Virus record (IMG/VR): IMGVR_UViG_3300027749_002876
Coordinates: 248,001-312,000 of that record
DNA: 64,000 nt
Strand: one strand, 5' to 3'
Shown here piece after piece: positions 21,735 to 40,471 of the stretch. How positions within the stretch are numbered: the first letter of the stretch is position 1; every line of letters starts with the position of its first letter. Made by a program: the position numbers and the translations under genes. The notes beneath the pieces were generated by a model. The model was not told the DNA's origin. It worked only from the letters and a program-made list of their open reading frames with translations, and did not search any database.

Positions 21735-22685
21735 TTATGCGTAACCGTAACTTGCGGCTGCTAGACTGTATCTAGCAGTACCTACTCCTGTAGTATCAGT
21801 TGCTGCCACACCTGTATTACTTACTAAGTTGGTTATTGCTGTTAGTCCCGAATTAGTTGATCCATATCCAAATATAGCAGTATCAACACCATAACTAGCG
21901 GCTGCTAGATCAGTTCTAGCAGTACCAACACCTGTTGTATCAGTTGCTACTATACCTGTATTGCTTACTTTGTTTGTTACTGACATATATGCAGAGGTAA
22001 CATCAAGCCCATAACCAAATATAGCTTGACCACTAGAACCATATCCTGCGGCTGCAAGTCCAATTCTGGCAGTACCAACACCGGTAGTATCCCCGGCAAC
22101 TACTCCTGTGTTGGACACTAAGTTGGTAATTGAATAATATCCTATACCAGATCGGTTTCCATATCCAAAAATAGCTTTATCTGTTCCGTACCCTGCGGCC
22201 GCAAGAAATCGTCTGATAGTACCGACACCTGTTGTATCTGTAGCTACCACACCTGTGTTTGATACTAGGTTAGTAAGTGAATATGTAGTGGCGTTTGCAT
22301 ATCCATAACCAAATATAGCTTTGTCAGTGCCATAACCGGCGGCTGCTAAACCAGCTCTAGCAGTACCTACTCCTGTAGTATCAGTTGCTACTACACCGGT
22401 GTTTGATACTAGGTTGGTTGCTGCCGTGTAACTAGTGCTTCCACCATAACCAAATAAGGCTTTATTTGTGCCATAACCTGCTGCCGCTAACTCATATCTA
22501 GCAGTACCAACACCTGTTGTATCAGTTGCTACTACACCGGTGTTTGATACTAGGTTGGTTATTGATACTCCGGGATTACTTCCTGCAGTACCATATCCAA
22601 ATATAGCTTTTTGTGAGGGAGGGGGAGGTAGAGTGATTGAGTAACCACCACTGAATGTTACCCCTGAAAAAACCATGTCTGCCAT
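21735..22685 (-). CDS. six-repeat Kelch-like beta-propeller protein, copy 1
   Basis: six ~48-aa repeats KAIFGYG-x(var)-SITNLVSNTGVVATDTTGVGTAR-xx-LAAAGYGTD. Confidence 0.8.
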   Translation of the reverse strand: MADMVFSGVTFSGGYSITLPPPPSQKAIFGYGTAGSNPGVSITNLVSNTGVVATDTTGVGTARYELAAAGYGTNKALFGYGGSTSYTAATNLVSNTGVVATDTTGVGTARAGLAAAGYGTDKAIFGYGYANATTYSLTNLVSNTGVVATDTTGVGTIRRFLAAAGYGTDKAIFGYGNRSGIGYYSITNLVSNTGVVAGDTTGVGTARIGLAAAGYGSSGQAIFGYGLDVTSAYMSVTNKVSNTGIVATDTTGVGTARTDLAAASYGVDTAIFGYGSTNSGLTAITNLVSNTGVAATDTTGVGTARYSLAAASYGYA

Positions 22686-22716
22686 AATATATTATCCTTT
22701 TGTTTTGTTTGTGAGA

Positions 22717-23649
22717 TTACGAACCAAATGTTGCGGCTGCAATGTAATTTCTAGCATAACCTACTCCTGTAGTATCAGTAGATACTACACCTGTATTTGA
22801 TACTAAATTGGTTATTGAAAGTGGACTACCGTTAGTGCCATAGCCAAATATAGCTTGTCCGGAGCTTCCATAGCCTGCAGCCGCCAAAGCATATCTAGTA
22901 GTACCAACACCAGTAGTATCTGTGGCAACTACGCCTGAATTAGAAACTTTATTGGTCATTGATAGTCCTGATCCAGTCCCTCCATATCCAAATATAGCTT
23001 TATCAGTTCCATAAGTTGCGGCAGCAAGATAACCTCTAGCAGTACCAACACCTGCAGTATCAGTAGCAACTACACCTGTATTTGATACTAGATTGGTTAT
23101 TGATACATCAGAAAAACCACTATCAAATCCATATCCAAAAATAGCTTTATCAGTTCCATAACCTGCGGCTGCTAATGCACCTCTAGCAGTACCTACACCT
23201 GTTGTATCTGTAGCAACTACCCCTGAATTAGAAACTTTATTGGTCATTGATATAGTATCAGATGTATACCCATATCCAAATATAGCCTTATCTGTGCCAT
23301 AACCTGCGGCAGCAAGATAACCTCTAGCAGTACCAACACCTGCAGTATCAGTAGCAACTACACCCGTGTTGCTTACTAGATTGGTTATAGATGAAGATAT
23401 ACCACTAACCAATCCATATCCAAATATTGCCTTGTCAGTGCCATAACTTGCGGCTGCCAACAAATTTCTAGCAGTACCTACACCTGAGGTATCATTAGCA
23501 ACTACACCGGTGCTTGATACAATGTTGGTTATTGATACTGCGCCGGATGAACCTGATCCATATCCAAAAATAGCTCTAATATTTGGGGGAGGTGCTGTAA
23601 TTGCAAATCCACCACTGAAATTTACACCTGAAAAAACTATGTCTGCCAT
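22717..23649 (-). CDS. six-repeat Kelch-like beta-propeller protein, copy 2
   Basis: same six-repeat architecture. Confidence 0.8.
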   Translation of the reverse strand: MADIVFSGVNFSGGFAITAPPPNIRAIFGYGSGSSGAVSITNIVSSTGVVANDTSGVGTARNLLAAASYGTDKAIFGYGLVSGISSSITNLVSNTGVVATDTAGVGTARGYLAAAGYGTDKAIFGYGYTSDTISMTNKVSNSGVVATDTTGVGTARGALAAAGYGTDKAIFGYGFDSGFSDVSITNLVSNTGVVATDTAGVGTARGYLAAATYGTDKAIFGYGGTGSGLSMTNKVSNSGVVATDTTGVGTTRYALAAAGYGSSGQAIFGYGTNGSPLSITNLVSNTGVVSTDTTGVGYARNYIAAATFGS

Positions 23650-23680
23650 ACTATGTTATCCTTTTGTTTTGTTTGTGAGA

Positions 23681-24637
23681 CTATCTACTGTAACTTGAGG
23701 CTGCTAGTTCTTGTCTAGCAGTACCGACACCAGTTGTATCCGTAGCAACTACACCCGTATTTGATACCAGGTTAGTGATTGCTGTTACTGTAGCAGATCC
23801 ATCATTTACACTACCATATCCAAAAATAGCTTTATCTGCACCGTATCCTGCGGCAGCCGGGTTTGCTCTTACGGTACCTACACCTGTAGTATCAGTAGCT
23901 ACTACACCTGTGTTACTTACTAAGTTGGTCACATTTGTAACAGGATATCCTACTCCATATCCAAATATAGCTTTATCAGTGCCATAAGTTGCGGCTCCTA
24001 ACTGACTTCTAGCGGTTCCAACTCCCGTAGTGTCTGTAGCAACTACACCCGTATTTGATACTAAGTTGGTCATTGATACTCGGGTAAAACCATTATCGGC
24101 TCCATATCCAAAAATAGCTTTGTCAGTTCCATAACCAGTGGCCGCAAGAGCTTGTCTAGCAGTACCAACACCTGTAGTATCTGTAGCAACAACACCTGTA
24201 TTTGACACTAGGTTGGTTATTGAGTACACGGTACTGCTTGTAGCACCATACCCAAATATAGCTTGTCCAGAGCTACCATATCCTGCGGCTGCTATATAAC
24301 TCCTAGCAGTACCTACACCTGTTGTATCACTAGCAACTACACCGGTGTTTGATACTAGATTGGTTACTGATTGATATACATTAGTATTATTCCTTCCATA
24401 ACCAAATATAGCTTTATCTGTACCATATACAGTGGCTGCTAGATTTACCCTAGTAGTGCCAACACCTGCAGTATCAGTAGCGACAACGCCTGTATTTGAT
24501 ACTAGGTTAGTTATTGATACATAAAGATTAGTGACAGTTGAACCATATCCAAATATTGCCTTAGCTGAGGGTGGAGGAGGTGTAATGCTAATCCCAGTAC
24601 CAATTGTTATTCCTGATCCAAATATTATATCTGCCAT
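23681..24637 (-). CDS. six-repeat Kelch-like beta-propeller protein, copy 3
   Basis: same six-repeat architecture. Confidence 0.8.
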   Translation of the reverse strand: MADIIFGSGITIGTGISITPPPPSAKAIFGYGSTVTNLYVSITNLVSNTGVVATDTAGVGTTRVNLAATVYGTDKAIFGYGRNNTNVYQSVTNLVSNTGVVASDTTGVGTARSYIAAAGYGSSGQAIFGYGATSSTVYSITNLVSNTGVVATDTTGVGTARQALAATGYGTDKAIFGYGADNGFTRVSMTNLVSNTGVVATDTTGVGTARSQLGAATYGTDKAIFGYGVGYPVTNVTNLVSNTGVVATDTTGVGTVRANPAAAGYGADKAIFGYGSVNDGSATVTAITNLVSNTGVVATDTTGVGTARQELAASSYSR

Positions 24638-24665
24638 ACTATCCTTTTATGTTATTTTTTATATA

Positions 24666-25031
24666 CTACACTTCAAGCCAAGATGTTGTATCTTCATCCC
24701 ATTTATACATTTTATCATCTGTTGGCATTGGTACTGGTGAGTCCCACAAGCATTTAGTTTCATTTAATGTCCATGAATTGTAAGGCTTTGGTGGTATGAA
24801 TGCGTCAAGTGTTTCATCATAAGTGTACCCAATACCAGCATAGTTTTTGCGATACGGTGTACCACTGTTTGAATGAACACCACCATAAGTGTTGTAACTT
24901 GTGCGCTTGCAGATTTGACCGCGGACTTCACCGTAATGTTGTTCCCAATCAATATTGTTTTCCCCTTCATCTTTACCTACTATAACTTCAGTAACAATAT
25001 TATTTTCATTTAAAAATGCGTAATGTGCCAT
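24666..25031 (-). CDS. conserved phage protein, possible fibre/appendage assembly factor
   Basis: MAHYAFL...RKNYAGIGYTYD...FIPPKP...W; follows Gly-rich gene; ATAAATA at 25059-25065. Confidence 0.55.
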   Translation of the reverse strand: MAHYAFLNENNIVTEVIVGKDEGENNIDWEQHYGEVRGQICKRTSYNTYGGVHSNSGTPYRKNYAGIGYTYDETLDAFIPPKPYNSWTLNETKCLWDSPVPMPTDDKMYKWDEDTTSWLEV

Positions 25032-25072
25032 GTTTTTTCCTTTTTTAATTATTAATACTATTTATGCTAAAT

Positions 25073-27283
25073 TTAGAAGGTAATAGTTCCTGTACCGGCA
25101 GTAAATCTATACACTCTGTAGCCAGAACGAGATGGTTGGTCATAAGTTAAACCACTACCAATTGTTAGGGCAGGGTAACTGGTTGGATAAGCAATAATAA
25201 CTACTCCTGATCCACCGTTCCATCCAACGCTACCGGCATTAGAAGTTCTAGATCCGCCTCCGCCGTTGCCTGAATTTGCTGTAGCATCTCCACTAACAGT
25301 ATTAGACCAATAAGCCTGACCCCCTGCCGAATATGCAACATCTGAACCAGTAATGCCTTGTAAGGCGGCGCCTCCTCCGGTACCGCCTCCGGTTACACCG
25401 GTATCTATATCAGTTTTAGATTGACCAACTCCATTAGAACCACCTCCACCGGATCCTATCCAACCTCTATAGACACCTACATTAGTTGATGTACCTCCAT
25501 TAAATCCTTGACCGGATGTTGCTGTTCCACCTGCCATAGCTCCCGGAGTGTTGGTTGAACCATAAGAAGCTCCGCCTCCAGAACCACCACTACCACCGGG
25601 GTTAGTTAAGCCTGCCCCATATCCTCCACCGATTGCGGTATATCCAGTTAAAACTGAGTTAGTTCCGGCGCCAGCATTACCAGAGGTTTGTTGTCCTGCA
25701 CTTCCTCCTGCGCCCACGGTGACTGTATAGGAACCACTGAATGAAGCTGTAGCATAACCACCACCTACCATACCACCAGCACCTCCACCACCACCAGAAC
25801 CACCGCCTCCACCTGCTACCACAAGATATTCAGAAAGAGTTGAAGGTGCTTCTGTAGTAATACTATTACTTGGTGCACTTGGACTACTCGTACCAACGCT
25901 ATTTGTTGCTGTAACTGTAAATGTATAACTAGTAGAACCAGTTAAACCAGTCATATTAATAGTACCACTACCTGCTTGGCTTAATGTACCGGTGATTCCA
26001 CCTGGACTACTTGTTGCTGTATAACTTGTAATTGTAGCACCGCCGTTGCTTGCTGGTTGAGTAAATGAAACTGTAGCTGTAGTTGCACCAGTAGCTGTTG
26101 CTGTACCTATTGTTGGAGCTCCGGATACTGTAGGTGCTGCAACAGTAATTGTTCCTGTACCCGCAGTAAATGTATATATTGTGTTTCCACCTGAAGTTGT
26201 TTTAGTATATGTTAGTCCTACACTAATTGATGATAAGTCAGCATAACTAGATGGATAGGAAATGATAACAATACCAGAGCCACCGTTAACTGTTTGTCGT
26301 TGTGGTGATACACCGCCGGCGCCTCCACCTGTATTTGTAGTTCCGTCTGTAGCTGATGCGGCTCCTGCTCCTCCACCTTGCCCACCAGTACCTCCGCCAC
26401 CTAAACCGCCAATACCCTTAAGTGTATTCCATGTTGTGTAATCTGCACCTGCACCACCACCACCTGCATAGTATGTAGATGTTCCGGTAATACTTGAAGC
26501 AAGACCTACACCTCCATTACCTGCTTGCCCTGCTGTTAAGTTGGCACCAACTGCGCCGGCGCCACCGCCTCCACCGCCTCCGCGATAACTGCCATTTTGA
26601 GAATCACCGCCGTTATTACCTTGACCAACTGTGCCAGTACCGCCATAATCAAAATATCCGCCAGCTCCTCCACCCGAACCACCATTCAAGCCATTAGAAT
26701 CAGCATAAGCACCACCGCCACCTAATGAAGTAATTGATGAGAACACGCTATCACCTCCATTTGCAGTTCCAACTCCACCTGCACCAACCGTTACTGTAAA
26801 TGTACCACTGACAGAAAATCCTGAAGCTGTTCTGTACCCGCCGGCTCCGCCTCCTCCGCCATGATATGCACCAGCACATCCGCCGCCACCTGCGACTACA
26901 AGGTAATTAACAGATGATGGTGCTGACGGTGCTGATGTAGTAATACTATTACTTGCACTACTTGCATTACTTGTTCCTATTGCATTGGTTGCTGTAACTG
27001 TAAATGTATAACTAGTAGAACCAGTTAAACCACTAACAGTAATAGTACCACTACCTGCTTGACTTAATGTACCGGTGATTCCACCGGGACTGCTTGTAGC
27101 TGTATAACTTGTTATAGTTGAGCCGCCATTACTTGCAGGTTGAGTAAATGCCACTGTGGCTGTAGTTGAACCAGTAGACGTTGCAGTACCTATTGTAGGT
27201 GCACCCGGTACTGAGGGTGGTGGAGGTGTAATACTAACTCCACCTGAAATTGATATTCCGCCTGTAAATACGATATCCGCCAT
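25073..27283 (-). CDS. virion-associated protein with two FN3 + glycine-rich domain units
   Basis: Start moved to MADIVF at 27283 (AAGGAA RBS); 2x [PGAPTIGTAT...YTFTVTATN FN3 + YLVVAGGG...GGSGIVII Gly-rich domain]. Confidence 0.8.
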   Translation of the reverse strand: MADIVFTGGISISGGVSITPPPPSVPGAPTIGTATSTGSTTATVAFTQPASNGGSTITSYTATSSPGGITGTLSQAGSGTITVSGLTGSTSYTFTVTATNAIGTSNASSASNSITTSAPSAPSSVNYLVVAGGGGCAGAYHGGGGGAGGYRTASGFSVSGTFTVTVGAGGVGTANGGDSVFSSITSLGGGGAYADSNGLNGGSGGGAGGYFDYGGTGTVGQGNNGGDSQNGSYRGGGGGGGAGAVGANLTAGQAGNGGVGLASSITGTSTYYAGGGGAGADYTTWNTLKGIGGLGGGGTGGQGGGAGAASATDGTTNTGGGAGGVSPQRQTVNGGSGIVIISYPSSYADLSSISVGLTYTKTTSGGNTIYTFTAGTGTITVAAPTVSGAPTIGTATATGATTATVSFTQPASNGGATITSYTATSSPGGITGTLSQAGSGTINMTGLTGSTSYTFTVTATNSVGTSSPSAPSNSITTEAPSTLSEYLVVAGGGGGSGGGGGAGGMVGGGYATASFSGSYTVTVGAGGSAGQQTSGNAGAGTNSVLTGYTAIGGGYGAGLTNPGGSGGSGGGASYGSTNTPGAMAGGTATSGQGFNGGTSTNVGVYRGWIGSGGGGSNGVGQSKTDIDTGVTGGGTGGGAALQGITGSDVAYSAGGQAYWSNTVSGDATANSGNGGGGSRTSNAGSVGWNGGSGVVIIAYPTSYPALTIGSGLTYDQPSRSGYRVYRFTAGTGTITF

Positions 27284-27320
27284 GATATATTCTTCCTTTA
27301 TAGTATTTAGCAAAAAACAA

Positions 27321-27342: not shown

Positions 27343-27362
27343 TTATTCAATCTCAATGGAGA

Positions 27363-28247
27363 TTAGAAGCGATGTGTTACACCAACTCCAACTTGTTTTA
27401 CGTCATTTGTTGTGCCTTTAGCGTCAACATTACGATAGTTGACACCTAAACTAGTACGCTTACTGAAGTTATAATCAGCACCCATTGCATAAGCTTTTAC
27501 ATCAGTATTTGTTTTACCATAACTAGCTTTTGCTGTGATTGCACCAAATTGCTGGCTTGCACCAATCAAATCACCAGTACGTGCTACGGCACCTTTGTCA
27601 TCACTATGTGTGTAAAATACTTGTGTATTGCCTAATTTTGCGCTACCAGCATACACTGTGCTTTTCTCAACACCTTGAGTATATTGTGCAACTGTTGCGT
27701 TAATACCAAACAATTTTGCACTTGCACTATAGCTAGTTGCTTCTGTACCTACACCATTTTGTGTGCGGTCATAAGTTGCAGTTACACCCTTCATTGGTGT
27801 TAATGCAAAGAATGTACCATTGCTGATACGCAGACCACGCAAGTTATGTACATCACCTGCAACACTACCATACAATGTGCCAAAAGCGTCATTGTTAGTG
27901 ATTGCTAAAAAGTGACTGTGTAGATTGCGACCCAAGTCAACACTACCAATACTATTTACTAAGCCGATTGTTGATTGACGATCACCTAGTTTAGTTGCGG
28001 CGCCACCTGTTGGATCATTAGCTGCCAAACTTGTATCTAATACTACACGAGCCTTCAAACCTGCACCAATGTTTTCTGTAGCAGAAAGTGTGATGTTGCT
28101 TGTTGGGTCAGTAGCTAGACTTGTTTTGCTAATAGCACCAGTTTTAGTATTGTCAACAAATTCGCTGATTTTACCATTTAAACTAACTTGTGCTGTAGCA
28201 ACCATTGTTGTTGCTGCCAATAATGTCGCTATTGCGATTTTCTTCAT
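27363..28247 (-). CDS. Gram-negative trimeric porin
   Basis: signal peptide MKKIAIATLLAATTMVATA, ENIGAGLKA, DRQSTIGL..GSVDLGR, GADYNFSKRT, C-terminal VGVTHRF beta-signal. Confidence 0.88.
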   Translation of the reverse strand: MKKIAIATLLAATTMVATAQVSLNGKISEFVDNTKTGAISKTSLATDPTSNITLSATENIGAGLKARVVLDTSLAANDPTGGAATKLGDRQSTIGLVNSIGSVDLGRNLHSHFLAITNNDAFGTLYGSVAGDVHNLRGLRISNGTFFALTPMKGVTATYDRTQNGVGTEATSYSASAKLFGINATVAQYTQGVEKSTVYAGSAKLGNTQVFYTHSDDKGAVARTGDLIGASQQFGAITAKASYGKTNTDVKAYAMGADYNFSKRTSLGVNYRNVDAKGTTNDVKQVGVGVTHRF

Positions 28248-28361
28248 AAGATTTTCCTTTAAAAATAAACCTGATTTCTCAGGCTAGACTAATATTTATG
28301 TTGTTTTTTATTGTTGATATAAAATAGTTGTTTGCGTAATAACAACGAGTTTAACGTGGAT

Positions 28362-28381
28362 AAAGGCTCTTTCGAGCCTTT
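28362..28381 (-). terminator. intrinsic terminator, AGGCTC/GAGCCT family
   Basis: AAAGGCTC-TTTC-GAGCCTTT hairpin. Confidence 0.7.
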
Positions 28382-28399
28382 GTTTTTGTGGTTGTTTGA

Positions 28400-29341
28400 T
28401 TATGCGTAACCGTAACTTGCGGCTGCTAGTCCACTTCTAGCAGTACCGACACCTGTAGTATCTGTAGCAACTACCCCGGTGTTTGATACTAGGTTGGTCA
28501 ACGATAGATAACTTTCTCTACCCCCGTATCCAAATATAGCAGTATCAACTCCATAGCCAGCGGCTGCTAGATAAGTTCTACCAGTACCGACAGCGGTAGT
28601 ATCTGTAGCAACAACTCCTGTGTTTGATACTAGGTTGGTCATTCCGTAATACGGGCTACCACCAGCTCCTAAACCAAATCCAAAGATAGCTTTATCGGTG
28701 CCAAAAGTTGCGGCGGCTAACGCATATCTGGCCTGCCCTACACCTGTTGTATCTGTAGCAACTACACCTGTATTTGATACTTTATTGGTTACTGATGTAG
28801 TGGTAGGCGTAGCAGAGTATCCATATCCAAAAATAGCTTTATCGGTACCATAACCTGCGGCTGCAGGGTTACTCCTAGCAGTGCCAACACCGGCTGTGTC
28901 GTTAGCAACTACACCTGTGTTACTTACTAGATTGGTTATTGCTGTTCTAACCCAGCTACCATTATTGTATATACCATAACCAAAGATGGCTTTATCTGTT
29001 CCATAGCCTGCGGCTGCTAGTCCACTTCTAGCAGTACCGACACCTGTAGTATCTGTAGCAACTACACCGGTATTTGATACTTTGTTGGTTATTGCGGTCT
29101 GTGGAGTACCATATCCATATATAGCTTTATCACTACCGTAGCCTGCGGCAGCTGGTTCGCTTCTAGCTGTACCAACACCTGTAGTATCTGCGGCAACTAC
29201 CCCTGTGTTACTTACTAGATTGGTCATTGATAAAGAAGGACCATTAGTACCATATCCAAATATTGCCTTACTTGTTGGGGGAGGAGGTTGTGGTGTTACA
29301 CTCAATCCACCCGTAAATGTTAGTCCACCTGTAAAATCCAT
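28400..29341 (-). CDS. six-repeat Kelch-like beta-propeller protein, copy 4
   Basis: same six-repeat architecture. Confidence 0.8.
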   Translation of the reverse strand: MDFTGGLTFTGGLSVTPQPPPPTSKAIFGYGTNGPSLSMTNLVSNTGVVAADTTGVGTARSEPAAAGYGSDKAIYGYGTPQTAITNKVSNTGVVATDTTGVGTARSGLAAAGYGTDKAIFGYGIYNNGSWVRTAITNLVSNTGVVANDTAGVGTARSNPAAAGYGTDKAIFGYGYSATPTTTSVTNKVSNTGVVATDTTGVGQARYALAAATFGTDKAIFGFGLGAGGSPYYGMTNLVSNTGVVATDTTAVGTGRTYLAAAGYGVDTAIFGYGGRESYLSLTNLVSNTGVVATDTTGVGTARSGLAAASYGYA

Positions 29342-29372: not shown

Positions 29373-30317
29373 TTAAGTTGATCCGTAACTTGCGGCGGCT
29401 AGATGATACCTAGCAGTACCCACACCGGTTGTATTTGTAGCTACTACACCAGTATTTGATACCAGGTTGGTTATGGATGTGACATTAATCACACTACTAT
29501 ATCCATATCCAAATATAGCTTTATCATTATTATAAGTTGCGGCAGCTAATCCAAGCCTTGCAGTACCAACTCCAGTTGTATCCGTAGCAACAACACCAGT
29601 GTTTGATACTAGATTAGTTACTGCTGTATAACTAACGCCACCATTAAGAAAGCCGTAGCCAAATATGGCTTTATCAGTTCCATAACCTACGGCTGCTAGC
29701 TCACCTCTAGCAGTACCAACACCGGTAACATCATTGGCTACTACACCCGTATTTGATACTAGGTTAGTTAGTGAATAAGTTACGCTAGATTGAGTAGTAC
29801 CATAACCAAATATAGCAGTACCAGTTCCATAAGTTGCGGCTGCCAATCCAACTCTAGCTGTACCAACACCTGTAACATCATTTCCAACAACACCCGTATT
29901 TGATACTAGGTTGGTCATTGAATAAACGCCACCACCACCATAACCAAAAATAGCTTTATCTGTACCATAACCAGTGGCCGCAAGATTATTTCTAACAGTA
30001 CCAACACCAGTTGTATCTGTAGCAACAACACCTGTATTTGACACTAGATTAGTTATTGATACAGTACTTGCTCCAGTATATCCATATCCAAATATAGCTT
30101 TGTCGTTTCCATAGCCTGCGGCTGCTAGATAGTATCTAGCAGTGCCAACACCGGTAGTATCACCTGCAACTACACCTGTATTTGATACTTTGTTAGTCAT
30201 TGATACTGAGGGTGTACCTCCATATCCAAAAATAGCATATGTACTATATGAGGGTGGAGGTAGAGTTACTGAGTAACCACCACTAAATGTTACACCTGAA
30301 AAAACCATATCTGCCAT
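29373..30317 (-). CDS. six-repeat Kelch-like beta-propeller protein, copy 5
   Basis: same architecture; GATAAATA at 30336-30343 and AAGGAG RBS. Confidence 0.8.
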   Translation of the reverse strand: MADMVFSGVTFSGGYSVTLPPPSYSTYAIFGYGGTPSVSMTNKVSNTGVVAGDTTGVGTARYYLAAAGYGNDKAIFGYGYTGASTVSITNLVSNTGVVATDTTGVGTVRNNLAATGYGTDKAIFGYGGGGVYSMTNLVSNTGVVGNDVTGVGTARVGLAAATYGTGTAIFGYGTTQSSVTYSLTNLVSNTGVVANDVTGVGTARGELAAVGYGTDKAIFGYGFLNGGVSYTAVTNLVSNTGVVATDTTGVGTARLGLAAATYNNDKAIFGYGYSSVINVTSITNLVSNTGVVATNTTGVGTARYHLAAASYGST

Positions 30318-30352
30318 AATATATCTCCTTTAATGTATTTATCAGAAAAGAA

Positions 30353-32065: not shown

Positions 32066-32670
32066 TTTTTATTAAACAATAAACTAGAAGCGATTATCAT
32101 CGCTGTTTGTGCGGCTTCTACATCTGTGGGCTGTTCTTTCCAACCTACACTAATCTGTCCAATGAACACGCCGGGTTCAGCTGGTACGCTAATACGACAC
32201 ATATAGTTTACACCGTATTCTTTGTATACAAAGCCAATAAGACTTTGTGGTTTTGAATATGGACTACAAGGAATCTTACCTGACATTAAACCAATGACAT
32301 CATTGTTGTTGTCATAGTTTTTACTAAATAATCCAACTTCTAACCCGTCATTTCTTTTATCTCTACCACCATTGCGTGTAGCTAAGTAAACAACTTTTCG
32401 TGTGTTAATTAATGTGTTGACTTCAAGAAAGGCAACCATTTCTACTTCAGTATTTTTTAATAAGAAATTGTATGCCTCATCATACTTACCGTTCATTTTA
32501 GGTAATGCTTGCTGGGCACGATAACTTGCTAAAAAGGCATCTTTTTCCGTATAAACTATCCAACCACCAAAGCCTAGTATACAGAGAAACACAACGGTAA
32601 ATAGGCGAAATGGACTTTCGCCTATATAGGTTAATAAACTAAAGAGAAAATCTTTAAGTTTGTCCACCAA
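32062..32670 (-). CDS. single-TM protein resembling T4 holin T (periplasmic GAF-like domain)
   Basis: 202 aa; amphipathic N-terminus, one TM, WIVYTEKDAFLASYR and GVNYMCRI..GVFIGQISVGWK resemble T4 gpT segments as recalled. Confidence 0.55.
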   Translation of the reverse strand: MVDKLKDFLFSLLTYIGESPFRLFTVVFLCILGFGGWIVYTEKDAFLASYRAQQALPKMNGKYDEAYNFLLKNTEVEMVAFLEVNTLINTRKVVYLATRNGGRDKRNDGLEVGLFSKNYDNNNDVIGLMSGKIPCSPYSKPQSLIGFVYKEYGVNYMCRISVPAEPGVFIGQISVGWKEQPTDVEAAQTAMIIASSLLFNKK

Positions 32671-33940: not shown

Positions 33941-34759
33941 TTATTTCTTTTCAGCTTTGTATCGTTCCATTAACTTTTTAGTGTCAATGTTGTTGTATTC
34001 ATTTTTAATAACGTAATTAATAATGCTTAACAATTGCAGTGATTTAGGATTTACTGCGATAGCAATATTATCAACACTGTCACTGATTGTGATACTCTTT
34101 GTGCTAATTGCGGCTTCTGGTTTTTCAAAAGCGATTTTCTTAATCTCAAATTCATCACGATAAGCGGCTGCGATATCACCACGTGTAACTTTGTCAATAA
34201 TCACATCCCATTTATCTTCCGGGAGAAATACAGCATTAGGGAAATTAGTACGTGCAAATGTGTCATAGCTTGAGTTGCGAATGAAACTTATTTTACCATT
34301 GAAATTTCTAATCACTTGATATACTTCACGACCCTGACTGTTTTGGCTTAACCATAAACGATTGATAACTAAACTTTGTCTAAGTTTAATATAAGGATCA
34401 CTGAATCTAACTACTTGTAGTCTGGGCCCAGTTACAGATAATTTACTAACTGCAACGTCGGCACGACCATCTCTTACTTGCTCAACGACTTCGGCAAAAC
34501 TTTCTGCATCTCGTCTAAACTGTACTGGAACTCCAAGCATTACGCCAATTCTCCGTGCAATTTCAACGTCAAGACCATGTATATCATCCTCGCCCCCACT
34601 GAAGAAGGGAGGGTTATCTTTTTTGGTCATTGCCACAATAAGAACGTTTGCTTTCTTAATTGCGGCAATATCATTGGGTAGTGGTACGGTACTAGTTGGT
34701 AATTGTGCGTGGACAACTGAACTAAACAATACACATAATAATAGTAGTAGTTTTTTCAT
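33941..34759 (-). CDS. periplasmic amino-acid substrate-binding protein (family 3)
   Basis: signal peptide, DNPPFF, GLDVEIARRIG, GRADVAVSKLSVTGPR, FSDPY; ATAAATA 7 nt upstream. Confidence 0.9.
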   Translation of the reverse strand: MKKLLLLLCVLFSSVVHAQLPTSTVPLPNDIAAIKKANVLIVAMTKKDNPPFFSGGEDDIHGLDVEIARRIGVMLGVPVQFRRDAESFAEVVEQVRDGRADVAVSKLSVTGPRLQVVRFSDPYIKLRQSLVINRLWLSQNSQGREVYQVIRNFNGKISFIRNSSYDTFARTNFPNAVFLPEDKWDVIIDKVTRGDIAAAYRDEFEIKKIAFEKPEAAISTKSITISDSVDNIAIAVNPKSLQLLSIINYVIKNEYNNIDTKKLMERYKAEKK

Positions 34760-35422: not shown

Positions 35423-35437
35423 TTTTTTCTCCTAAGT

Positions 35438-35626
35438 TTAATTCCAGCCCTGTGGCCATTTTGAATTGTTTGTTTTTTGGTCAGCCAACATTCTGATCCA
35501 TTCTTTACGCACAGCAAGATCATGCTTCATACGTTCTAATTGATCTAGTGAGTTATCACTATAAAAGATATAGTAAAATGGAATACCAAATCCAAAACCC
35601 AACATAAAATAAGCAATGTAGTCCAT
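35438..35626 (-). CDS. small membrane protein
   Basis: 62 aa, N-terminal hydrophobic helix. Confidence 0.6.
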   Translation of the reverse strand: MDYIAYFMLGFGFGIPFYYIFYSDNSLDQLERMKHDLAVRKEWIRMLADQKTNNSKWPQGWN

Positions 35627-35627
35627 A

Positions 35628-38099
35628 TTAATTTCCTAACTTATATTGTTGGTTAACCATTTCTTGATGTTTGGTATCACTACCACCAGTCAACCCACGT
35701 AGTAATCTAACATTGTCAACTGTTTGTTGATTCTTATATACTTCTTTTATTTCATAAAATGATGCATCTTTTAAAACAAAAGAATAAGCATTGAATCCAG
35801 TAGGTACACTAGCTATTAATGCAATGTCAATATTACCTGCTAATTCATTTGGCAACACATTTCTATTCACTGAGCTTGTGGGTTGAGTTATATTGTTTTG
35901 CATTAACTCAAATCGTTGTTGCATTATTATTTCTGATAATGGATTACCTGCTTTACCTATTCCACTAAAACTAGACATTTGATACTGATGTGTTTCAACT
36001 TCATATTGTATTGAATCTAATTTAGGTTGATATATTGGTGCTTGCTGTGGTAACATTGACACAGTACCAGAACTAGACAGTACTACAGGATTATAAGCAA
36101 ACAAATTACGGGTAACTACTATACCGGTGCCACTATTAGATTGTTGCTGAGTTTCAACCTCTAGTGTGGTAGGTGGTTTTAATATAACAACTTGTGTTGA
36201 TTGCGTTTCTTGTTGTAGTACTGGAGGGATATACACAAACTGCGGAGTTTGTATTACATTGATAGAATGTGATAATGCTTGTTGTGAATCCTGTTGTTGT
36301 ACTTGAGGACCTGCTCTACTTCCCTGTTGTTGTGTTTGCATACTATTTTGCGTAGTTTGTTGTTGATTAAATTGTGTTGATGATTGTATACTCGTTTGTG
36401 TTGATTGACTAGCAAATGTAGCGGATGTAGTTGCGCTACTAGCACTCATATCTTGGTTCATACTAACTAAAGCGTTACTAGTAGCTTGTGAACTTTGCAT
36501 TGTATTTTCTAATGTTTTTGCGGCATTAGATACTGCGACATTTTGTGTAGCTTTATCTTTATCTTGTGAAGATTTAACGACACTCATTGCTAACTTACTA
36601 GGGCCAGCGCCGCCACCTGATTGTTGTTGATTTGATGATCCGGATGCTTGAGTTTGTGCTGGACCACCTGCAGGTCCGGGTGATCCTGTTGGTGCAGGTT
36701 GTGATGGATCTGATTGTGCCACTGCTGTTTGCTGATTTGAATCTTGTGGTGGACTTGATTGTTGCTGTTGTTGCTGTTGCGATTGTTGTTGAGTTTGTTC
36801 TGGTTGTGTATTACCCTGATTTTGATCTAGTTGTCCAGTATTAGCAGACATTGAGGTTCCACCTGAGGATACAATAGCACCTGAGGCACTAGCAACTGTT
36901 GATCCTAATAACATATTCTTAGCAAACGCAACAGCATATCCAGAACACGATGCATTATACAATGGATTAGATACACACGGATCTGCTGTATAGACTAAAC
37001 TTGCTGAAAAATTACCTACAGATGATCCTGTACCTGAAGTGTTGCCAGTAAGGCTTACTCTGCCTAACGATATTTGATTCAAACTAGTTGGCAACAAATA
37101 CTGTCCACTTACTGATCCACTAGTTCCATCACCGGATAATGTATTACTTTTTGAATATATTGTTTGATTATTACTATTAGTAAGTCGTGCCGTAGCACTT
37201 ACTTGGGCTGGAATATTCATATACCAACTACAAGAACCATCTTGGTTAGTAGCTGTACAACCGTACCAACTTTGTCCTACATTGTAATCAAAACCATAAT
37301 TAAAGCCGTGTACAGTAGCACCAATACCGCCGTTCTTTAATGCTGTATTGATAGCAAATGATTGATTTACAGCACTACCCCATACATTACTATTGAAAAG
37401 ATTGTCACCGGTCGCAACTGTACTAAACTTAGGACAAGTTGTACTATAAGCAGGATTGAGGGCACATGGATCAACACGATATTTTAAACTGAAGCTGACA
37501 TTATAAATTTCAGGACCATAGTTTCCAGCCCAGAAGTTTGTATCTCTACCTACAAATCCTACTTGTGCGTTAGTATAATTTGATGCGGCAACTGGGTTAG
37601 CAAATGTTTCACTGAAGTTAAAGTTAGTCCAGTTATATTTTCTATTGGTTTGGTTTGTATAATCATAGTTAGCCATTAGACCCGAACTGCCATATAACTT
37701 AACATAAGCGGCTAGGTAATCTTGTTGGCCGTTATCCCACCCATTGCCGTTCTTGGCTGTAAACCCAAAGTTGAATCCACTAAGTTGTACACCATTACCG
37801 CCGGCAGCCAATGCTTTGTTTATGTTAACCACTTGATTTAAATCTACTTGGCCATAAGAATAGTTAATATATCCTCCGGGTCTAACACTGGGGTTTGGCC
37901 CGCAATTGCCTGCACCACCGGCACCAAAACATACTTGATTAACATAGACGCCATTATTCCAAGTGCTGGTTGTATCCGTAGCAGAATTACCGTAATTTAT
38001 TAAATTACCGGTAGTACTATCTACTTGACTATTACTTGAAAGCGTTATGAATGAGAACGCCAAGCAAAGCGCCAAAGCCAACTTTCTTGTAAGTGTCAT
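35628..38099 (-). CDS. large secreted protein, two beta-rich domains plus Q/S/T-rich region
   Basis: signal-like N-terminus; two DPC..NP.Y...C motifs; poly-Q tracts. Confidence 0.7.
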   Translation of the reverse strand: MTLTRKLALALCLAFSFITLSSNSQVDSTTGNLINYGNSATDTTSTWNNGVYVNQVCFGAGGAGNCGPNPSVRPGGYINYSYGQVDLNQVVNINKALAAGGNGVQLSGFNFGFTAKNGNGWDNGQQDYLAAYVKLYGSSGLMANYDYTNQTNRKYNWTNFNFSETFANPVAASNYTNAQVGFVGRDTNFWAGNYGPEIYNVSFSLKYRVDPCALNPAYSTTCPKFSTVATGDNLFNSNVWGSAVNQSFAINTALKNGGIGATVHGFNYGFDYNVGQSWYGCTATNQDGSCSWYMNIPAQVSATARLTNSNNQTIYSKSNTLSGDGTSGSVSGQYLLPTSLNQISLGRVSLTGNTSGTGSSVGNFSASLVYTADPCVSNPLYNASCSGYAVAFAKNMLLGSTVASASGAIVSSGGTSMSANTGQLDQNQGNTQPEQTQQQSQQQQQQQSSPPQDSNQQTAVAQSDPSQPAPTGSPGPAGGPAQTQASGSSNQQQSGGGAGPSKLAMSVVKSSQDKDKATQNVAVSNAAKTLENTMQSSQATSNALVSMNQDMSASSATTSATFASQSTQTSIQSSTQFNQQQTTQNSMQTQQQGSRAGPQVQQQDSQQALSHSINVIQTPQFVYIPPVLQQETQSTQVVILKPPTTLEVETQQQSNSGTGIVVTRNLFAYNPVVLSSSGTVSMLPQQAPIYQPKLDSIQYEVETHQYQMSSFSGIGKAGNPLSEIIMQQRFELMQNNITQPTSSVNRNVLPNELAGNIDIALIASVPTGFNAYSFVLKDASFYEIKEVYKNQQTVDNVRLLRGLTGGSDTKHQEMVNQQYKLGN

Positions 38100-39423
38100 C
38101 TATTTCTTCCTTTTGAAGTTTTGGTAACTTATCTGGATTTGCTTCCCAAGCTGCCTTAGCTTGTTCACCGATCTTACCTTCGTATGGGCAAGGGGTACCT
38201 GCAGCCAACATAGCATCAAATACTCTTCGGTCTTGACACATGGTAGCAACAGCGGCTACTTTCATACCCATGTCATATAGTGTTTTAGATAACTTTAATC
38301 GTTCACAATTTAAATCACGACTAGTACTACCTGCACCAACACCAAATATTTGTGTTTGAATACTACCACTTGTACCAGTACTACATAAATCAGCATTACC
38401 ACCACTCATCATTGCTGGAGCCACCGCAGTTGGTGGAGGTTGAATAACTTTCTGTGTGACCACACTTTCGTTTTTATTAATATTAGTCACTTCACCGCTG
38501 TTAATGTTTTGATTGACATTAGCATTTTGATTAACATTAGTGCTTGTACTAGTATTGTTGTTGTTATTTGTCATAGTACCGTTGTTGGTATTTTGATTAA
38601 TGTTAGTCATTGTACCACTATTGATGTTAGTGTTTGTGTTACTTGTTGTAGCCGTAGTGTTATTGATATTACGGTTAGTCATATCACCGGTATTAACATT
38701 GTTATTAGTATTTGTACTTGTGCTAGTGTTAACATTGTTGTTATTGTTAGTCATTGTACCATATTGATAATTTGTGTTAGTACTTGTGCTAACGTTATTG
38801 TTGTTATTAGTATTAGTGCTTGTGCTAACATTATTGTTATTGTAAGTCATTGTACCACTATTAATATTGTTATTTGTATTAACTGATGTACTTGCTGATG
38901 TACTGTTATTATTATTGTTAAACGTTTGAGTTCCGCTGTTTACATTATTGTTAGTATTAACATTGGTGCTCGAACTAGTGCTGGTATTAACATTGTTATT
39001 GTTGTTGGTCATAGTACCAGTATTAACGTTGTTATTGTTAAACGTTTGTGTTCCACTGTTGACGTTGTTATTATTGTTTGTATAGGTAACACTACCACTC
39101 ATAACGTTGTTATTGTTATTGTTGTTGGTCATTGTGCCACTGTTAACATTGTTATTGTTGTTGGTGTTAGTTGTGCCACCTGTTAAGTTGGTATTATTGT
39201 TATTAGTAATAGTTCCGCTGTTAACATTGTTAGTGTTAACTGTACTTACACTATTACTGGTACTGTTAGTATCAACCAAAGATTTACTATCATAAGTACC
39301 CTGATTAATAACCGTACTTGTTCCGGTAGTTGTTCCACCAGTAGAACCTGATGTAGTAGTAGTTTGTGCTTGCGTAGTGAATGCCATACCCAGCATGGCA
39401 ACTATAGCGAGAATCTTTTTCAT
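38032..39423 (-). CDS. secreted Asn/Thr-rich repeat protein with Cys-containing C-terminal domain
   Basis: signal peptide MKKILAIVAMLGMAFTTQA; repeated NNNNVNSGTMT; four Cys in C-terminal domain; hydrophobic tail. Confidence 0.75.
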   Translation of the reverse strand: MKKILAIVAMLGMAFTTQAQTTTTSGSTGGTTTGTSTVINQGTYDSKSLVDTNSTSNSVSTVNTNNVNSGTITNNNNTNLTGGTTNTNNNNNVNSGTMTNNNNNNNVMSGSVTYTNNNNNVNSGTQTFNNNNVNTGTMTNNNNNVNTSTSSSTNVNTNNNVNSGTQTFNNNNNSTSASTSVNTNNNINSGTMTYNNNNVSTSTNTNNNNNVSTSTNTNYQYGTMTNNNNNVNTSTSTNTNNNVNTGDMTNRNINNTTATTSNTNTNINSGTMTNINQNTNNGTMTNNNNNTSTSTNVNQNANVNQNINSGEVTNINKNESVVTQKVIQPPPTAVAPAMMSGGNADLCSTGTSGSIQTQIFGVGAGSTSRDLNCERLKLSKTLYDMGMKVAAVATMCQDRRVFDAMLAAGTPCPYEGKIGEQAKAAWEANPDKLPKLQKEEIDDTYKKVGFGALLGVLIHNAFK

Positions 39424-39494
39424 TTTTATTATCATCCTCTAGAGATAATATTTATTTGTTTTTTAGTTGAGAAATATCAAGCTTTATTAAATAG

Positions 39495-39515
39495 GAAAGG
39501 CTCTTAGAGCCTTTC
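39495..39515 (-). terminator. intrinsic terminator, AGGCTC/GAGCCT family
   Basis: GAAAGGCTC-TTA-GAGCCTTTC hairpin. Confidence 0.7.
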
Positions 39516-39532
39516 GTTTTGACTTTGATAAA

Positions 39533-40471
39533 TTATATACTATAATTTGAGGCGGCTAGTGCATATCTAGCAGTACCAACACCAGTAACGTCATTAGCAA
39601 CTACACCGGTGTTTGATACTAGGTTAGTTATTGCTGTTACACTTGCAGGTGAAAGTATCCTTCCATATCCAAATATTGCAGTATCTAAACCATAACCTGC
39701 GGCTGCTAGAATATATCTAGCGGTACCAACACCAGATGTATTAGTTGCAACTACACCTGTATTTGATACTTTATTGGTTATTGAAACATTTGGATTTCCA
39801 CCATAACCAAAAATAGCTTTATCTGTGCCATAAGTTGCGGCTGCTAATTGAGTTCTGGCAGTACCAACACCTGCAGTATCAGTAGCAACTACACCGGTAT
39901 TACTTACTAGATTGGTTATTGAAACTGGACCAACTGCGCCGTCTTCTCCAAATCCAAAAATTGCTTTATCTGTACCATAACCTGCGGCTGCTAGTGCATA
40001 TCTAGCAGTACCAACACCGGAAACGTCGGTGGAGACTACACCTGTGTTACTTACTAGGTTAGTTACTGCTGAGTAGGAGTAGGTATATCCATATCCAAAT
40101 ATAGCTTTATCAGTACCATAACCTGCCGCTCCTAGTTGACTTCTAGCAGTCCCTACTCCCGTAGTATCTGTAGCAACTACCCCTGTATTACTTACTAAAT
40201 TGGTCATTGATACAAGTCCGGAGTTGTTAAATCCATATCCAAATAGTGCTTTATCAGTACCATAGCCCGCTGCCGCTAGTTCATCTCTAGCAGTACCGAC
40301 TCCTGTTGTATCGGTTGCAACAACCCCAGTGTTACTTACTAGATTAGTTATTGATATATATGATGGGCTGGAATATCCATATCCAAAGATTGCTTTATAA
40401 GAGGGTGGGGGAGGTGCTGTAATTGCAAATCCACCACTGAAATTTACACCTGAAAAAATTATGTCTGCCAT
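39533..40471 (-). CDS. six-repeat Kelch-like beta-propeller protein, copy 6
   Basis: same architecture; GATAAATA at 40491-40498 and AAGGA RBS. Confidence 0.8.
   Translation of the reverse strand: MADIIFSGVNFSGGFAITAPPPPSYKAIFGYGYSSPSYISITNLVSNTGVVATDTTGVGTARDELAAAGYGTDKALFGYGFNNSGLVSMTNLVSNTGVVATDTTGVGTARSQLGAAGYGTDKAIFGYGYTYSYSAVTNLVSNTGVVSTDVSGVGTARYALAAAGYGTDKAIFGFGEDGAVGPVSITNLVSNTGVVATDTAGVGTARTQLAAATYGTDKAIFGYGGNPNVSITNKVSNTGVVATNTSGVGTARYILAAAGYGLDTAIFGYGRILSPASVTAITNLVSNTGVVANDVTGVGTARYALAASNYSI

What the first reader, a model, noticed from the sequence alone, without database searches (positions are those of the whole stretch)
22620..40471. A shared ~20-aa N-terminal peptide plus polyproline linker is fused to unrelated cargo domains
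Seen: M(A)D(I/M)(V/I)F(S/T)G-x3-4-GG-x2-(I/V)T-x-PPPP type leaders begin all six propellers and also the 736-aa FN3/Gly-rich protein (MADIVFTGGISISGGVSITPPPPS), whose body is unrelated. It is not a Sec signal. Several of the genes have late-type promoters. Inference: a plug-in docking tag that attaches interchangeable display domains to one site on the virion; potentially usable for phage display.
Basis: partly seen in the sequence, partly recalled or inferred. Interest (0 to 1): 0.75.

Follow-up and report, generated by a model that had tools for sequence, protein, structure and literature searches.

The report
Shared N-terminal tag on jumbo-phage adhesins
A 524-kb freshwater jumbo phage puts the same roughly 20-residue glycine/threonine-rich peptide and a proline-rich spacer in front of 21 late-expressed proteins with unrelated sugar- or protein-binding domains; it is most likely a plug that fixes interchangeable binding modules to the virus particle, but no attachment has been shown.

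Summary
All seven genes begin with the peptide. The window is part of a complete 524,565-bp phage genome that has 21 such genes, always with the peptide at the N-terminus.

Cargos here and in about 58 related viral contigs:
- a Kelch-type six-blade propeller, and a second propeller-like repeat family
- FN3 + propeller
- FN3 + Gly_rich_2, and Gly-rich alone
- Gly-rich + LamG + SPRY
- 3x LamG

One LamG cargo carries seven leader subtypes in different phages, so leader and cargo recombine freely.

- AlphaFold2 leaves residues 1-26 unstructured on both cargos tested. The peptide is therefore not a propeller strand.
- It has almost no charge and no hydrophobic core, so it is not a secretion signal.
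- Conservation is at the protein level.
- A GATAAATA motif precedes 3 of the 7 window genes, and also the tail tube and baseplate genes.
- Elsewhere the same propeller carries N-terminal modules that match tail-fibre and baseplate families.

Best reading, about 50% confidence: an N-terminal docking peptide, like the conserved peptides of branched receptor-binding-protein systems (KP32, K1-5). The concept is known. This peptide family, its scale and its lectin-like cargos are new. No acceptor site and no virion data exist.

The parts
22614..22685 (-). Leader + Pro linker (MADMVFSGVTFSGGYSITLPPPPS) of the propeller gene 21735-22685. No promoter of its own; 31 nt behind the preceding leader gene.
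23581..23649 (-). Leader + linker (MADIVFSGVNFSGGFAITAPPPN) of the propeller gene 22717-23649, in an operon with its neighbours.
24566..24637 (-). Leader + linker (MADIIFGSGITIGTGISITPPPPS) of the propeller gene 23681-24637.
27212..27283 (-). Leader + linker (MADIVFTGGISISGGVSITPPPPS) of the 736-aa gene 25073-27283, whose body is fn3 + Gly_rich_2 + fn3 + Gly_rich_2.
29270..29341 (-). Short-subtype leader + linker (MDFTGGLTFTGGLSVTPQPPPPTS) of the propeller gene 28400-29341.
30249..30317 (-). Leader + linker (MADMVFSGVTFSGGYSVTLPPPS) of the propeller gene 29373-30317.
   Evidence: An exact metatranscriptome contig covers 30073-30315 (weak).
40400..40471 (-). Leader + linker (MADIIFSGVNFSGGFAITAPPPPS) of the propeller gene 39533-40471. 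This is the protein that was modelled.
39533..40399 (-). Six-blade Kelch-type beta-propeller cargo (residues 25-312), representative of the six window propellers.
   Evidence: AF2 pLDDT 88.5, first strand at residue 27. Foldseek to KLHL12/17/20 and Keap1, TM 0.75-0.85. Weak sequence match to Photorhabdus PLL lectins, E 3e-4.
27304..27311 (-). GCTAAATA late-type promoter-like motif, 20 nt upstream of the FN3/Gly-rich ATG and preceded by a GGCTC-TTTTT-GAGCC terminator hairpin with a T run.
30336..30343 (-). GATAAATA motif 18 nt upstream of the ATG of gene 29373-30317, behind a terminator hairpin.
40491..40498 (-). GATAAATA motif 19 nt upstream of the ATG of gene 39533-40471, behind a terminator hairpin.
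24666..25031 (-). 121-aa gene (phrog_7759, function unknown) inside the leader-gene cluster, with its own CATAAATA motif at 25059-25066. A similar gene lies upstream of another leader gene elsewhere in the genome. Whether it belongs to the system is uncertain.

Best explanation
The peptide is an N-terminal docking module. It is an uncharged stretch of about 18 residues with the pattern h-x-h-x-(G/S)-G-h-T-h-(S/T)-G-G-x-x-h-h (h = hydrophobic), probably two or three short beta-strands. A proline-rich or glycine-rich spacer of 3-8 residues follows it.

On its own the peptide is unstructured. The inference is that it folds against an acceptor site on a structural protein of the virion, most likely in the tail, baseplate or fibre apparatus. 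That would hold the C-terminal cargo away from the particle on the spacer.

The cargos are Kelch/PLL-like propellers, LamG, SPRY, FN3 and Gly-rich domains. They are binding modules, so the 21 tagged proteins would form a set of interchangeable adhesins made late in infection. Leader subtypes would match particular sockets or phage lineages, while cargos move between phages by recombination at the leader/cargo boundary.

Shown: the modular anatomy, the restriction to the N-terminus and to viruses, independence from the cargo fold, protein-level conservation and the late-type promoter motif.

Inferred: binding to the virion, and the nature of the acceptor.
For: 1. The complete genome has 21 leader genes. 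G001 is 524,565 bp and CheckV rates it 100% complete; the 171-kb record holding the window is 99.995% identical to its positions 177099-348061. The leader is always at the N-terminus.
2. The cargos are unrelated folds: Kelch-type propeller, fn3 + Gly_rich_2, Gly_rich_2 alone and 3x Laminin_G_3. In related contigs: fn3 + propeller, Gly-rich + Laminin_G_3 + SPRY, and a second propeller-like repeat family.
3. Leader and cargo combine freely. One LamG cargo, conserved from its first residues '(N/T)DPYFMYN(S/T)..LPG' onward (43-68% identity over the whole protein), carries seven leader subtypes, including the window's MADMVFSGVTFSGGYSITLP.
4. The leader is outside the cargo fold. AF2 gives no secondary structure for residues 1-26, with pLDDT 53-62 on the propeller and about 35 on the LamG protein. 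Leaderless structural neighbours align from residue 22-23 on.
5. Across 97 distinct leaders the hydrophobic positions are 92-100% conserved and the glycine positions (8, 13, 14) 90-97%. K+R make up 0.3% of residues.
6. The codons differ at synonymous sites: 27 synonymous against 31 non-synonymous codon differences among the four MAD-type leaders that share a register (six pairs). The conservation therefore acts on the peptide.
7. Among the 120 best propeller homologues, 27 carry the leader. The others carry Mtd_N or modules that match PHROG tail fibre, tail spike and baseplate-connector families. The LamG cargo homologue in phage DSL-LC04 lies in the same block as its tail tape measure, adaptor and lysis genes.
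8. Of the 77 GATAAATA sites in the genome, 37 lie 8-35 nt upstream of an ORF start, against a median of 3% for same-composition permutations. The motif precedes the tail tube gene, the baseplate wedge gene and 10 of the 21 leader genes.
9. The tag is confined to viruses: 57 stretches in IMG/VR against 0 in GTDB genomes. It occurs in a second complete jumbo phage of 349 kb, which has 8 leader genes.
10. There is experimental precedent. A 29-aa N-terminal conserved peptide is necessary for virion incorporation of KP32 RBP2 and can carry a foreign domain (PMC13352976). Peptides of 7 and 11 residues do the same job in K1-5-type phages (PMC6872550).
Against: - There is no virion proteomics or imaging for this phage or any relative. 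No cultured phage matched either the propeller or the FN3/Gly-rich protein.
- No acceptor was identified. Only the N-terminal 76 residues of T4 gp10 find a match (E 1.7e-4). No gp10 D2/D3-type branching domain was detected.
- In many related contigs the leader genes lie among replication and metabolic genes, not in a structural module. No neighbouring gene co-occurs consistently.
- Phage receptor-binding proteins are usually trimers. Kelch propellers are usually monomers, and nothing here shows oligomerisation.
- The evidence for transcription is minimal: three small exact contigs in one metatranscriptome, at depth 2-3.
Confidence: 0.5

Rival explanations
1. The leader is a self-association tag, like the foldon of T4 fibritin. 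Three or more beta-hairpins would pack into a small bundle that makes the cargos multivalent, with or without attachment to the virion.
For: - The motif consists of short amphipathic strands separated by GG turns, followed by a rigid Pro spacer.
- It is disordered in monomer models, as expected for a segment that folds on association.
- N-terminal anchors of phage fibres are usually trimeric (established knowledge).
Against: - Nothing here shows self-association.
- It would not explain why one genome keeps five leader subtypes, or why subtypes swap on one cargo.
- This reading can also coexist with docking rather than replace it.
Confidence: 0.15
2. The leader is a packaging signal that sends the proteins into the capsid, like the capsid targeting sequence of the T4 internal proteins, so that they are injected or released with the DNA.
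For: It is a short N-terminal tag shared by unrelated late proteins. The T4 capsid targeting sequence is a known precedent for such a tag (own knowledge).
Against: - The leaders have almost no Glu (D+E about 2%). They therefore lack the L/I-x-E type cleavage site used by T4-like prohead proteases.
- The cargos are adhesion and lectin-type modules.
- Elsewhere the same propeller sits behind tail-fibre-type N-termini.
- A rigid Pro spacer has no obvious role for a packaged protein.
Confidence: 0.07
3. The tagged proteins act inside the infected cell. The tag would plug a family of Kelch, SPRY and LamG recognition modules into one phage or host enzyme such as a protease or modifier, in the way BTB-Kelch or SOCS-SPRY substrate receptors plug into cullins.
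For: - Kelch and SPRY domains are classic substrate-receptor modules, and paralogue expansions of them are typical of large DNA viruses (established knowledge).
- The proteins have no secretion signal.
- The genes are scattered among non-structural genes.
Against: - The promoter motif is shared with tail and baseplate genes.
- FN3 and Gly_rich_2 cargos, and the alternative tail-fibre-like N-termini on the same propeller, point to the virion.
- No candidate enzyme partner was seen.
Confidence: 0.07
4. The shared 5' end is not a functional peptide. It would be either a structural strand of each cargo or a nucleotide-level element (translation initiation region) copied by gene conversion.
For: The upstream Shine-Dalgarno site and spacer are also conserved among the genes.
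Against: - AF2 places no strand in residues 1-26 on two different cargos.
- The leaders differ at synonymous sites while keeping the residue pattern.
- The same cargo accepts seven leader subtypes.
- Leaderless propellers fold from residue 22-23 on.
Confidence: 0.03

Closest known systems
Conserved N-terminal docking peptides of branched receptor-binding-protein systems: KP32 gp38 (29 aa), KP34, K1E/K1-5/SP6 (7 and 11 aa), and the Menlow and PhiK64-1/RaK2 groups
   Same: A short N-terminal peptide is shared by proteins with unrelated distal domains. It is separable from the cargo fold, and cargos are exchanged horizontally. In KP32 the peptide is necessary for virion incorporation and can carry a foreign domain (PMC13352976, PMC6872550).
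   Different: - Those peptides sit on enzymatic tailspikes (depolymerases) in phages with 2-11 such proteins, and dock on a T4gp10-like branching domain of another tailspike.
- Here the cargos are non-enzymatic binding modules (Kelch/PLL propeller, LamG, SPRY, FN3, Gly-rich).
- There are 21 tagged genes in five subtypes.
- The peptide is a Gly/Thr-rich motif followed by a poly-Pro spacer.
- No gp10-like branching domain was found, and docking is untested.
Modular tail fibres and tailspikes with a conserved N-terminal anchor domain (P22 tailspike head-binding domain, T7 gp17 N-terminus, CBA120 TSP1-4)
   Same: The N-terminus attaches and the C-terminus binds the target. Recombination occurs at the boundary. 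The same propeller is found behind such larger N-terminal modules in other phages.
   Different: Those anchors are folded domains of about 100-180 residues. This is a peptide of about 20 residues that is unstructured on its own.
T4 capsid targeting sequence of the internal proteins
   Same: A short N-terminal tag shared by unrelated late proteins, and usable to load foreign proteins into particles.
   Different: It is cleaved at an L/I-x-E site by the prohead protease and directs proteins into the head. The present leader has no such site, and its cargos look like external adhesins.
Hoc and other Ig-like, FN3 or lectin-like decoration proteins of phage particles
   Same: Weakly binding, surface-displayed accessory domains that are dispensable for assembly and are used for phage display.
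   Different: Hoc binds the capsid through a folded C-terminal domain and is a single gene. Here a family of 21 genes shares an N-terminal peptide.

Membership tests
Conserved docking peptide of branched RBP systems (KP32/K1-5 type) | A short conserved N-terminal peptide shared by proteins whose distal domains are unrelated | tested here: met
   21 genes in the genome; at least seven cargo architectures counting related contigs
Conserved docking peptide of branched RBP systems (KP32/K1-5 type) | The peptide is not part of the cargo fold | tested here: met
   AF2 gives residues 1-26 no secondary structure and low pLDDT on two cargos. Leader subtypes swap on one cargo. This rests on prediction only.
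Conserved docking peptide of branched RBP systems (KP32/K1-5 type) | A partner protein with a T4gp10-like (D2/D3) branching domain in the same genome | tested here: inconclusive
   T4 gp10 matches only through its N-terminal residues 2-77, to an 844-aa protein (E 1.7e-4). phrog_677 gives two weak hits. No profile-profile search for the D2/D3 domains was possible.
Conserved docking peptide of branched RBP systems (KP32/K1-5 type) | The peptide is required for incorporation of the protein into virions | not testable with these tools
   Needs virion proteomics or genetics. No cultured relative was found.
Sec, Tat or lipoprotein signal peptide | A basic n-region, a hydrophobic h-region of about 10 or more residues, and a cleavage site or lipobox | tested here: not met
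   K+R make up 0.3% of leader residues. Hydrophobic residues alternate with T, S and G, and there is no hydrophobic run.
T4-type capsid targeting sequence | An N-terminal tag ending in an L/I-x-E prohead-protease cleavage site | tested here: not met
   E makes up 0.7% of leader residues, and no L/I-x-E appears in the leader consensus or in the leaders printed (no explicit motif scan was run). The definition of the site is from my own knowledge of T4.
Beta-propeller 'velcro' N-terminal closing strand | The N-terminal segment forms a strand of the last blade | tested here: not met
   The first strand starts at residue 27. The C-terminal strand 306-309 has the register of the inner strand of blade 1. 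The closure is inferred from the repeat register.
Kelch-type six-blade beta-propeller (the cargo) | A six-blade fold that superposes on Kelch domains | tested here: met
   Foldseek E 5e-13 and TM 0.75-0.85 to KLHL12/17/20 and Keap1. ESM Atlas neighbours are Kelch and PLL-like propellers.
Kelch-type six-blade beta-propeller (the cargo) | A sequence match to the Pfam Kelch or Beta-prop_PLL models | tested here: not met
   None of the six window propellers has a Pfam hit. The only sequence link is a weak PDB profile match to Photorhabdus PLL2 and PHL lectins, E 3e-4.

The most novel reading that the evidence does not exclude
The tag is not a virion anchor. It is an adaptor that plugs a diversifying family of Kelch, SPRY and LamG recognition modules into one phage-encoded or host enzyme inside the cell. 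That would be a bacteriophage counterpart of the BTB-Kelch and SOCS-SPRY substrate-receptor families of eukaryotes and poxviruses, used against host proteins.
Probability: 0.07. Interest if true: 0.85.

Novelty: new variant of a known kind. Interest (0 to 1): 0.58.

Why it matters
Very large phages carry many unexplained paralogue families. Here one such family resolves into a simple grammar of tag + spacer + interchangeable binding domain, found in freshwater jumbo phages of about 350-525 kb.

If the tag is a docking peptide, it would explain how one particle can carry some twenty different adhesins, and how new specificities are acquired by recombination at a sharp boundary. It would also offer a very short natural handle, about 20 residues, for attaching foreign domains to a phage particle.

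The tag also makes the question testable. It defines exactly which proteins to look for in virion proteomes, and which peptide to use as bait to find the acceptor.

Tried and rejected
- **Homotrimer prediction of the propeller protein**. Verdict: no support and no evidence against. It is not used either way.
- **Profile of the 23-position leader against 1.84 billion representative proteins**. Only three hits passed E 1e-3: two propeller fragments and one unrelated repeat protein. The peptide is too short for a database of that size, so no new cargos came from this search.
- **Search with the FN3/Gly-rich protein**. FN3 repeats dominated the result. No hit passed the leader profile, although several N-termini look leader-like by eye (MSLSIGPGINIVGSVIITP, MNINNGVTLSNGFSVAPP).
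- **megablast and tblastn against cultured phages** for the region, the propeller and the FN3/Gly-rich protein. No match, so no proteomics-backed relative exists.
- **Leader profile against PDB sequences**. No hit at E up to 10.
- **Search for an acceptor.** T4 gp10 and phrog_677 gave only weak N-terminal matches. Neighbour clustering around leader genes in 58 contigs gave QueC-like, polymerase-like and Dps-like genes but no consistent structural partner.
- **Metatranscriptome**. Only three short exact contigs, with no transcript ends, so the promoter could not be confirmed.
- **Four large fibre proteins that share an MAxxPFxxVxGxSVG N-terminus.** They turned out to be paralogues along much of their length, not a second tag system.


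Full report
**What the window is.** The window encodes a T4-type large terminase and a UvsX-like recombinase. It belongs to a 170,963-bp IMG/VR virus record. That record is 99.995% identical, over its whole length, to positions 177099-348061 of IMGVR_UViG_3300027749_002876. This second record is 524,565 bp long and CheckV rates it 100% complete. A window coordinate equals the coordinate in that genome minus 248,000. The phage comes from fresh water. No cultured phage resembles the region at the DNA level, or matches the propeller or the FN3/Gly-rich protein at the protein level; the LamG cargo does have cultured-phage homologues.

**The observation.**
- Six genes of about 310 aa on the minus strand begin with the leader: 21735-22685, 22717-23649, 23681-24637, 28400-29341, 29373-30317 and 39533-40471. 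So does the 736-aa gene 25073-27283.
- Five propeller leaders and the 736-aa leader are of the MAD(I/M)(V/I)F type.
- Gene 28400-29341 has a shorter subtype, MDFTGGLTFTGGLSVTPQPPPP.
- The 736-aa protein is fn3 + Gly_rich_2 + fn3 + Gly_rich_2.
- The similarity is not chance. A profile built only from propeller leaders finds the 736-aa N-terminus at E 2.5e-7 among 3,941 six-frame ORFs, and the next unrelated ORF scores E 0.35.

**Extent in the genome.** The leader profile finds 21 ORFs in the complete genome, each time at the N-terminus.
- 17 are propellers, one of them truncated.
- One is the FN3/Gly-rich protein.
- One is a 284-aa protein that is leader + Gly_rich_2 only.
- Two are near-identical proteins of 668 and 670 aa that are leader + three Laminin_G_3 domains.
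- A 245-aa LamG protein has a more divergent, leader-like N-terminus.
- There are five leader subtypes: MAD.., MDF/MEI.., MDIGAG.., M(E/Q)FSGM.. and M(S/T)(I/V)T(I/V)TGG...

**Extent elsewhere.**
- Three degenerate DNA patterns for leader subtypes found 6, 57 and 9 stretches in IMG/VR. They come from about 58 contigs.
- The second pattern found nothing in 596 Gb of bacterial and archaeal genomes.
- The larger contigs are fragments estimated at 17-34% of their genomes. One is a complete 348,701-bp genome with 8 leader genes.
- Further cargos appear in these contigs: fn3 + propeller (401 aa), Gly-rich + Laminin_G_3 + SPRY (733 aa), Gly-rich alone (293 aa), and a second six-repeat family (YGWFGGG..RITYATDTATASVRGPL) without a Pfam match.
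- A search seeded on the first 40 residues of the LamG protein was the most telling result. The cargo is conserved from its first residues '(N/T)DPYFMYN(S/T)..LPG' onward, with 43-68% identity over the whole protein. In different metagenomic phages it carries seven leader subtypes, including the window's own MADMVFSGVTFSGGYSITLP.
- Leader and cargo are therefore independent modules with a sharp junction.

**Anatomy of the leader.** Across 97 distinct N-termini:
- Profile positions 3, 5, 9 and 11 are hydrophobic in 92-100% of sequences.
- Position 8 is Gly in 97%, position 10 is Thr/Ser in 93%, and positions 13 and 14 are Gly in 90% and 94%.
- Positions 19-23 are proline-rich. Some leaders have a Gly- or Ala-rich spacer there instead.
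- Lys+Arg make up 0.3% and Asp+Glu about 2% of residues.
- There is no basic n-region and no hydrophobic core, so this is not a signal peptide.
- The alternating pattern with GG turns suggests two or three short amphipathic beta-strands. That is an inference.
- Codon comparison shows many synonymous differences. Between the FN3/Gly-rich leader and that of gene 23681-24637, 12 codons are identical, 5 differ synonymously and 7 non-synonymously. Over the six pairs among the four MAD-type leaders that share a register, the totals are 27 synonymous and 31 non-synonymous. Selection therefore acts on the peptide, and the similarity is not a recent DNA copy.

**Is the leader part of the fold?** No, by every test available.
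- AlphaFold2 on the protein of gene 39533-40471 used a 41-sequence alignment and gave mean pLDDT 88.5. The model is a six-blade propeller whose first strand starts at residue 27. Residues 1-26 have no secondary structure, with pLDDT 53 (residues 1-10) and 62 (residues 11-20).
- The model matches the Kelch domains of KLHL12, KLHL17, KLHL20 and Keap1 at E about 5e-13 and TM 0.75-0.85.
- The ESM Atlas model (pTM 0.89) has the same neighbours. Leaderless neighbours align from residue 22-23 on.
- From the repeat register, the C-terminal strand 306-309 supplies the inner strand of blade 1, so the ring closes without the leader. This last point is an inference.
- On the LamG protein the leader again has no structure, with pLDDT about 35. 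That whole model is only moderate, at 69.7.
- By sequence, the propeller's only solved relatives are the Photorhabdus PLL2 and PHL lectins, and the match is weak (E 3e-4).

**Expression signals.**
- Three window genes have a terminator hairpin, a T run, a G(A/C)TAAATA motif, and then AAAGGA 7-9 nt before the ATG. They are 25073-27283, 29373-30317 and 39533-40471.
- The other four follow a neighbour by about 30 nt, or follow the 121-aa gene, which has a CATAAATA motif.
- In the whole genome, 37 of 77 GATAAATA sites lie 8-35 nt upstream of an ORF start. The median for same-composition permutations is 3%. In the window alone the count is not enriched: 10 sites against 5.9 expected.
- The motif precedes the tail tube gene (phrog_4542), the gp6-like baseplate wedge gene (phrog_10646, E 1e-256), several tail-fibre-like genes, and 10 of the 21 leader genes.
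- It resembles the T4 late promoter TATAAATA (my own knowledge).
- One lake metatranscriptome holds three short exact contigs, at depth 2-3. One lies on the FN3/Gly-rich gene and two on gene 29373-30317, including its leader codons. This is weak evidence of transcription.

**What the cargos say.**
- Among the 120 best propeller homologues, 27 carry the leader. Another 35 carry an N-terminal module of about 135-200 aa, and 22 carry one of two modules of about 62-65 aa. The rest have Mtd_N, Laminin_G_3 or other N-termini.
- The longer modules match PHROG families annotated as tail protein, tail spike, tail fibre or baseplate connector.
- The ~65-aa MALNPSG-type module (as M(A/T)LPSSGAISL...) and the MALVL.DRV..T N-terminus are also found on FN3 and Gly-rich proteins.
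- The closest cultured-phage homologue of the LamG cargo is in phage DSL-LC04. It lies in the same block as the tail tape measure, adaptor and lysis genes, and has yet another N-terminus.
- The cargos thus behave like the distal binding domains of tail fibres, whose N-terminal part is the piece that fits a particular phage.

**Interpretation.** The best-supported reading is that the leader is a docking peptide that attaches interchangeable binding modules to the virion. The polyproline segment would act as a spacer. The closest known system is the conserved N-terminal peptide of secondary receptor-binding proteins in branched systems.
- In KP32, deleting the first 29 residues abolishes incorporation of RBP2. 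The peptide can also carry the K1F endosialidase into the particle (PMC13352976).
- Peptides of 7 and 11 residues serve in K1E, K1-5 and SP6, and similar peptides are proposed for the 11-tailspike jumbo phage PhiK64-1 (PMC6872550).
- The differences here are the peptide itself, the number of tagged genes, the lectin-like rather than enzymatic cargos, and the lack of a detectable gp10-like branching domain.

Docking itself is inferred, not shown. No acceptor was found, and no gene co-occurs consistently with the leader genes. Rival readings remain open at lower probability: a self-association tag, a capsid-targeting signal, and an intracellular adaptor tag.

**Verdict.** I rate this a new variant of a known kind, of moderate to high interest. 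It gives a clear grammar for a large paralogue family in megaphages and a precise, testable hypothesis.

Noticed in passing
window 27363-28247, 31385-32065, 32654-33928, 33941-34759 (all minus strand): Host-like genes sit among the leader genes: a Gram-negative porin (Porin_4), an Asp/Glu racemase, a sodium:dicarboxylate symporter and a family-3 solute-binding protein. Together they look like a phage-borne amino-acid uptake and conversion set.
   Followed up: partly
P0241 (metagenomic protein, 96 aa); corresponds to window 27363-29341: In a relative, the leader and first blade of a propeller are fused in frame to the last 45 or so residues of the porin. This looks like a deletion spanning the junction of the propeller gene 28400-29341 and the porin gene.
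   Followed up: no
window 40872-45215 (-): A 1,447-aa ORF contains about a dozen repeats with the motifs 'FDFSW(R/H)PDP' and 'F/YIYxWGNK'. It has no Pfam or PHROG match.
   Followed up: no
window 46338-52508 (+): Three radical-SAM proteins lie in a run of four consecutive genes; one of them also has a B12-binding domain. They sit on the opposite strand, next to the repeat protein.
   Followed up: no
window 35628-38099 and 38032-39435 (-): Two proteins have N-terminal signal-like sequences and very long low-complexity regions, one Q-rich and the other N/T-rich with 'NNNNVNSGT' repeats. Neither has a family match apart from a weak phrog_20531 hit.
   Followed up: no
window 24666-25031 (-); full genome about 452.9-453.15 kb (+): A 121-aa phrog_7759 gene lies between two leader genes. 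A second gene ending in the same '..Y.WDE.TT.W' C-terminus lies directly upstream of another leader gene. It may be a helper for these proteins, or the adjacency may be coincidence.
   Followed up: partly
full genome (G001) 311469-329150 (-): A 5,894-aa ORF lies directly downstream of the gp6-like baseplate wedge gene. It has a weak match to a baseplate tail-fibre connector family near its N-terminus. It is a candidate platform for attached proteins.
   Followed up: partly
full genome (G001) about 172-175 kb and 520-522.5 kb: A block is duplicated: a leader + 3x LamG gene (670 and 668 aa) plus a Dps-like 145-aa gene. The upstream regions of the two copies are identical.
   Followed up: no
L073:476-1477:+, L090:10258-11217:- and others: A second six-repeat protein family (YGWFGGG...RITYATDTATASVRGPL) of about 320 aa carries the same leader in other jumbo-phage contigs. 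It has no Pfam match and is probably another propeller.
   Followed up: partly
P0126, P0225-P0230; L133:6287-6600:+ (phage DSL-LC04): Another recurrent N-terminal module, '..G(S/K)ASGVW(N/T)...(A/V)...W(P)', precedes FN3/Gly-rich and LamG cargos in other phages. It suggests a wider repertoire of short N-terminal modules on the same cargo families.
   Followed up: no
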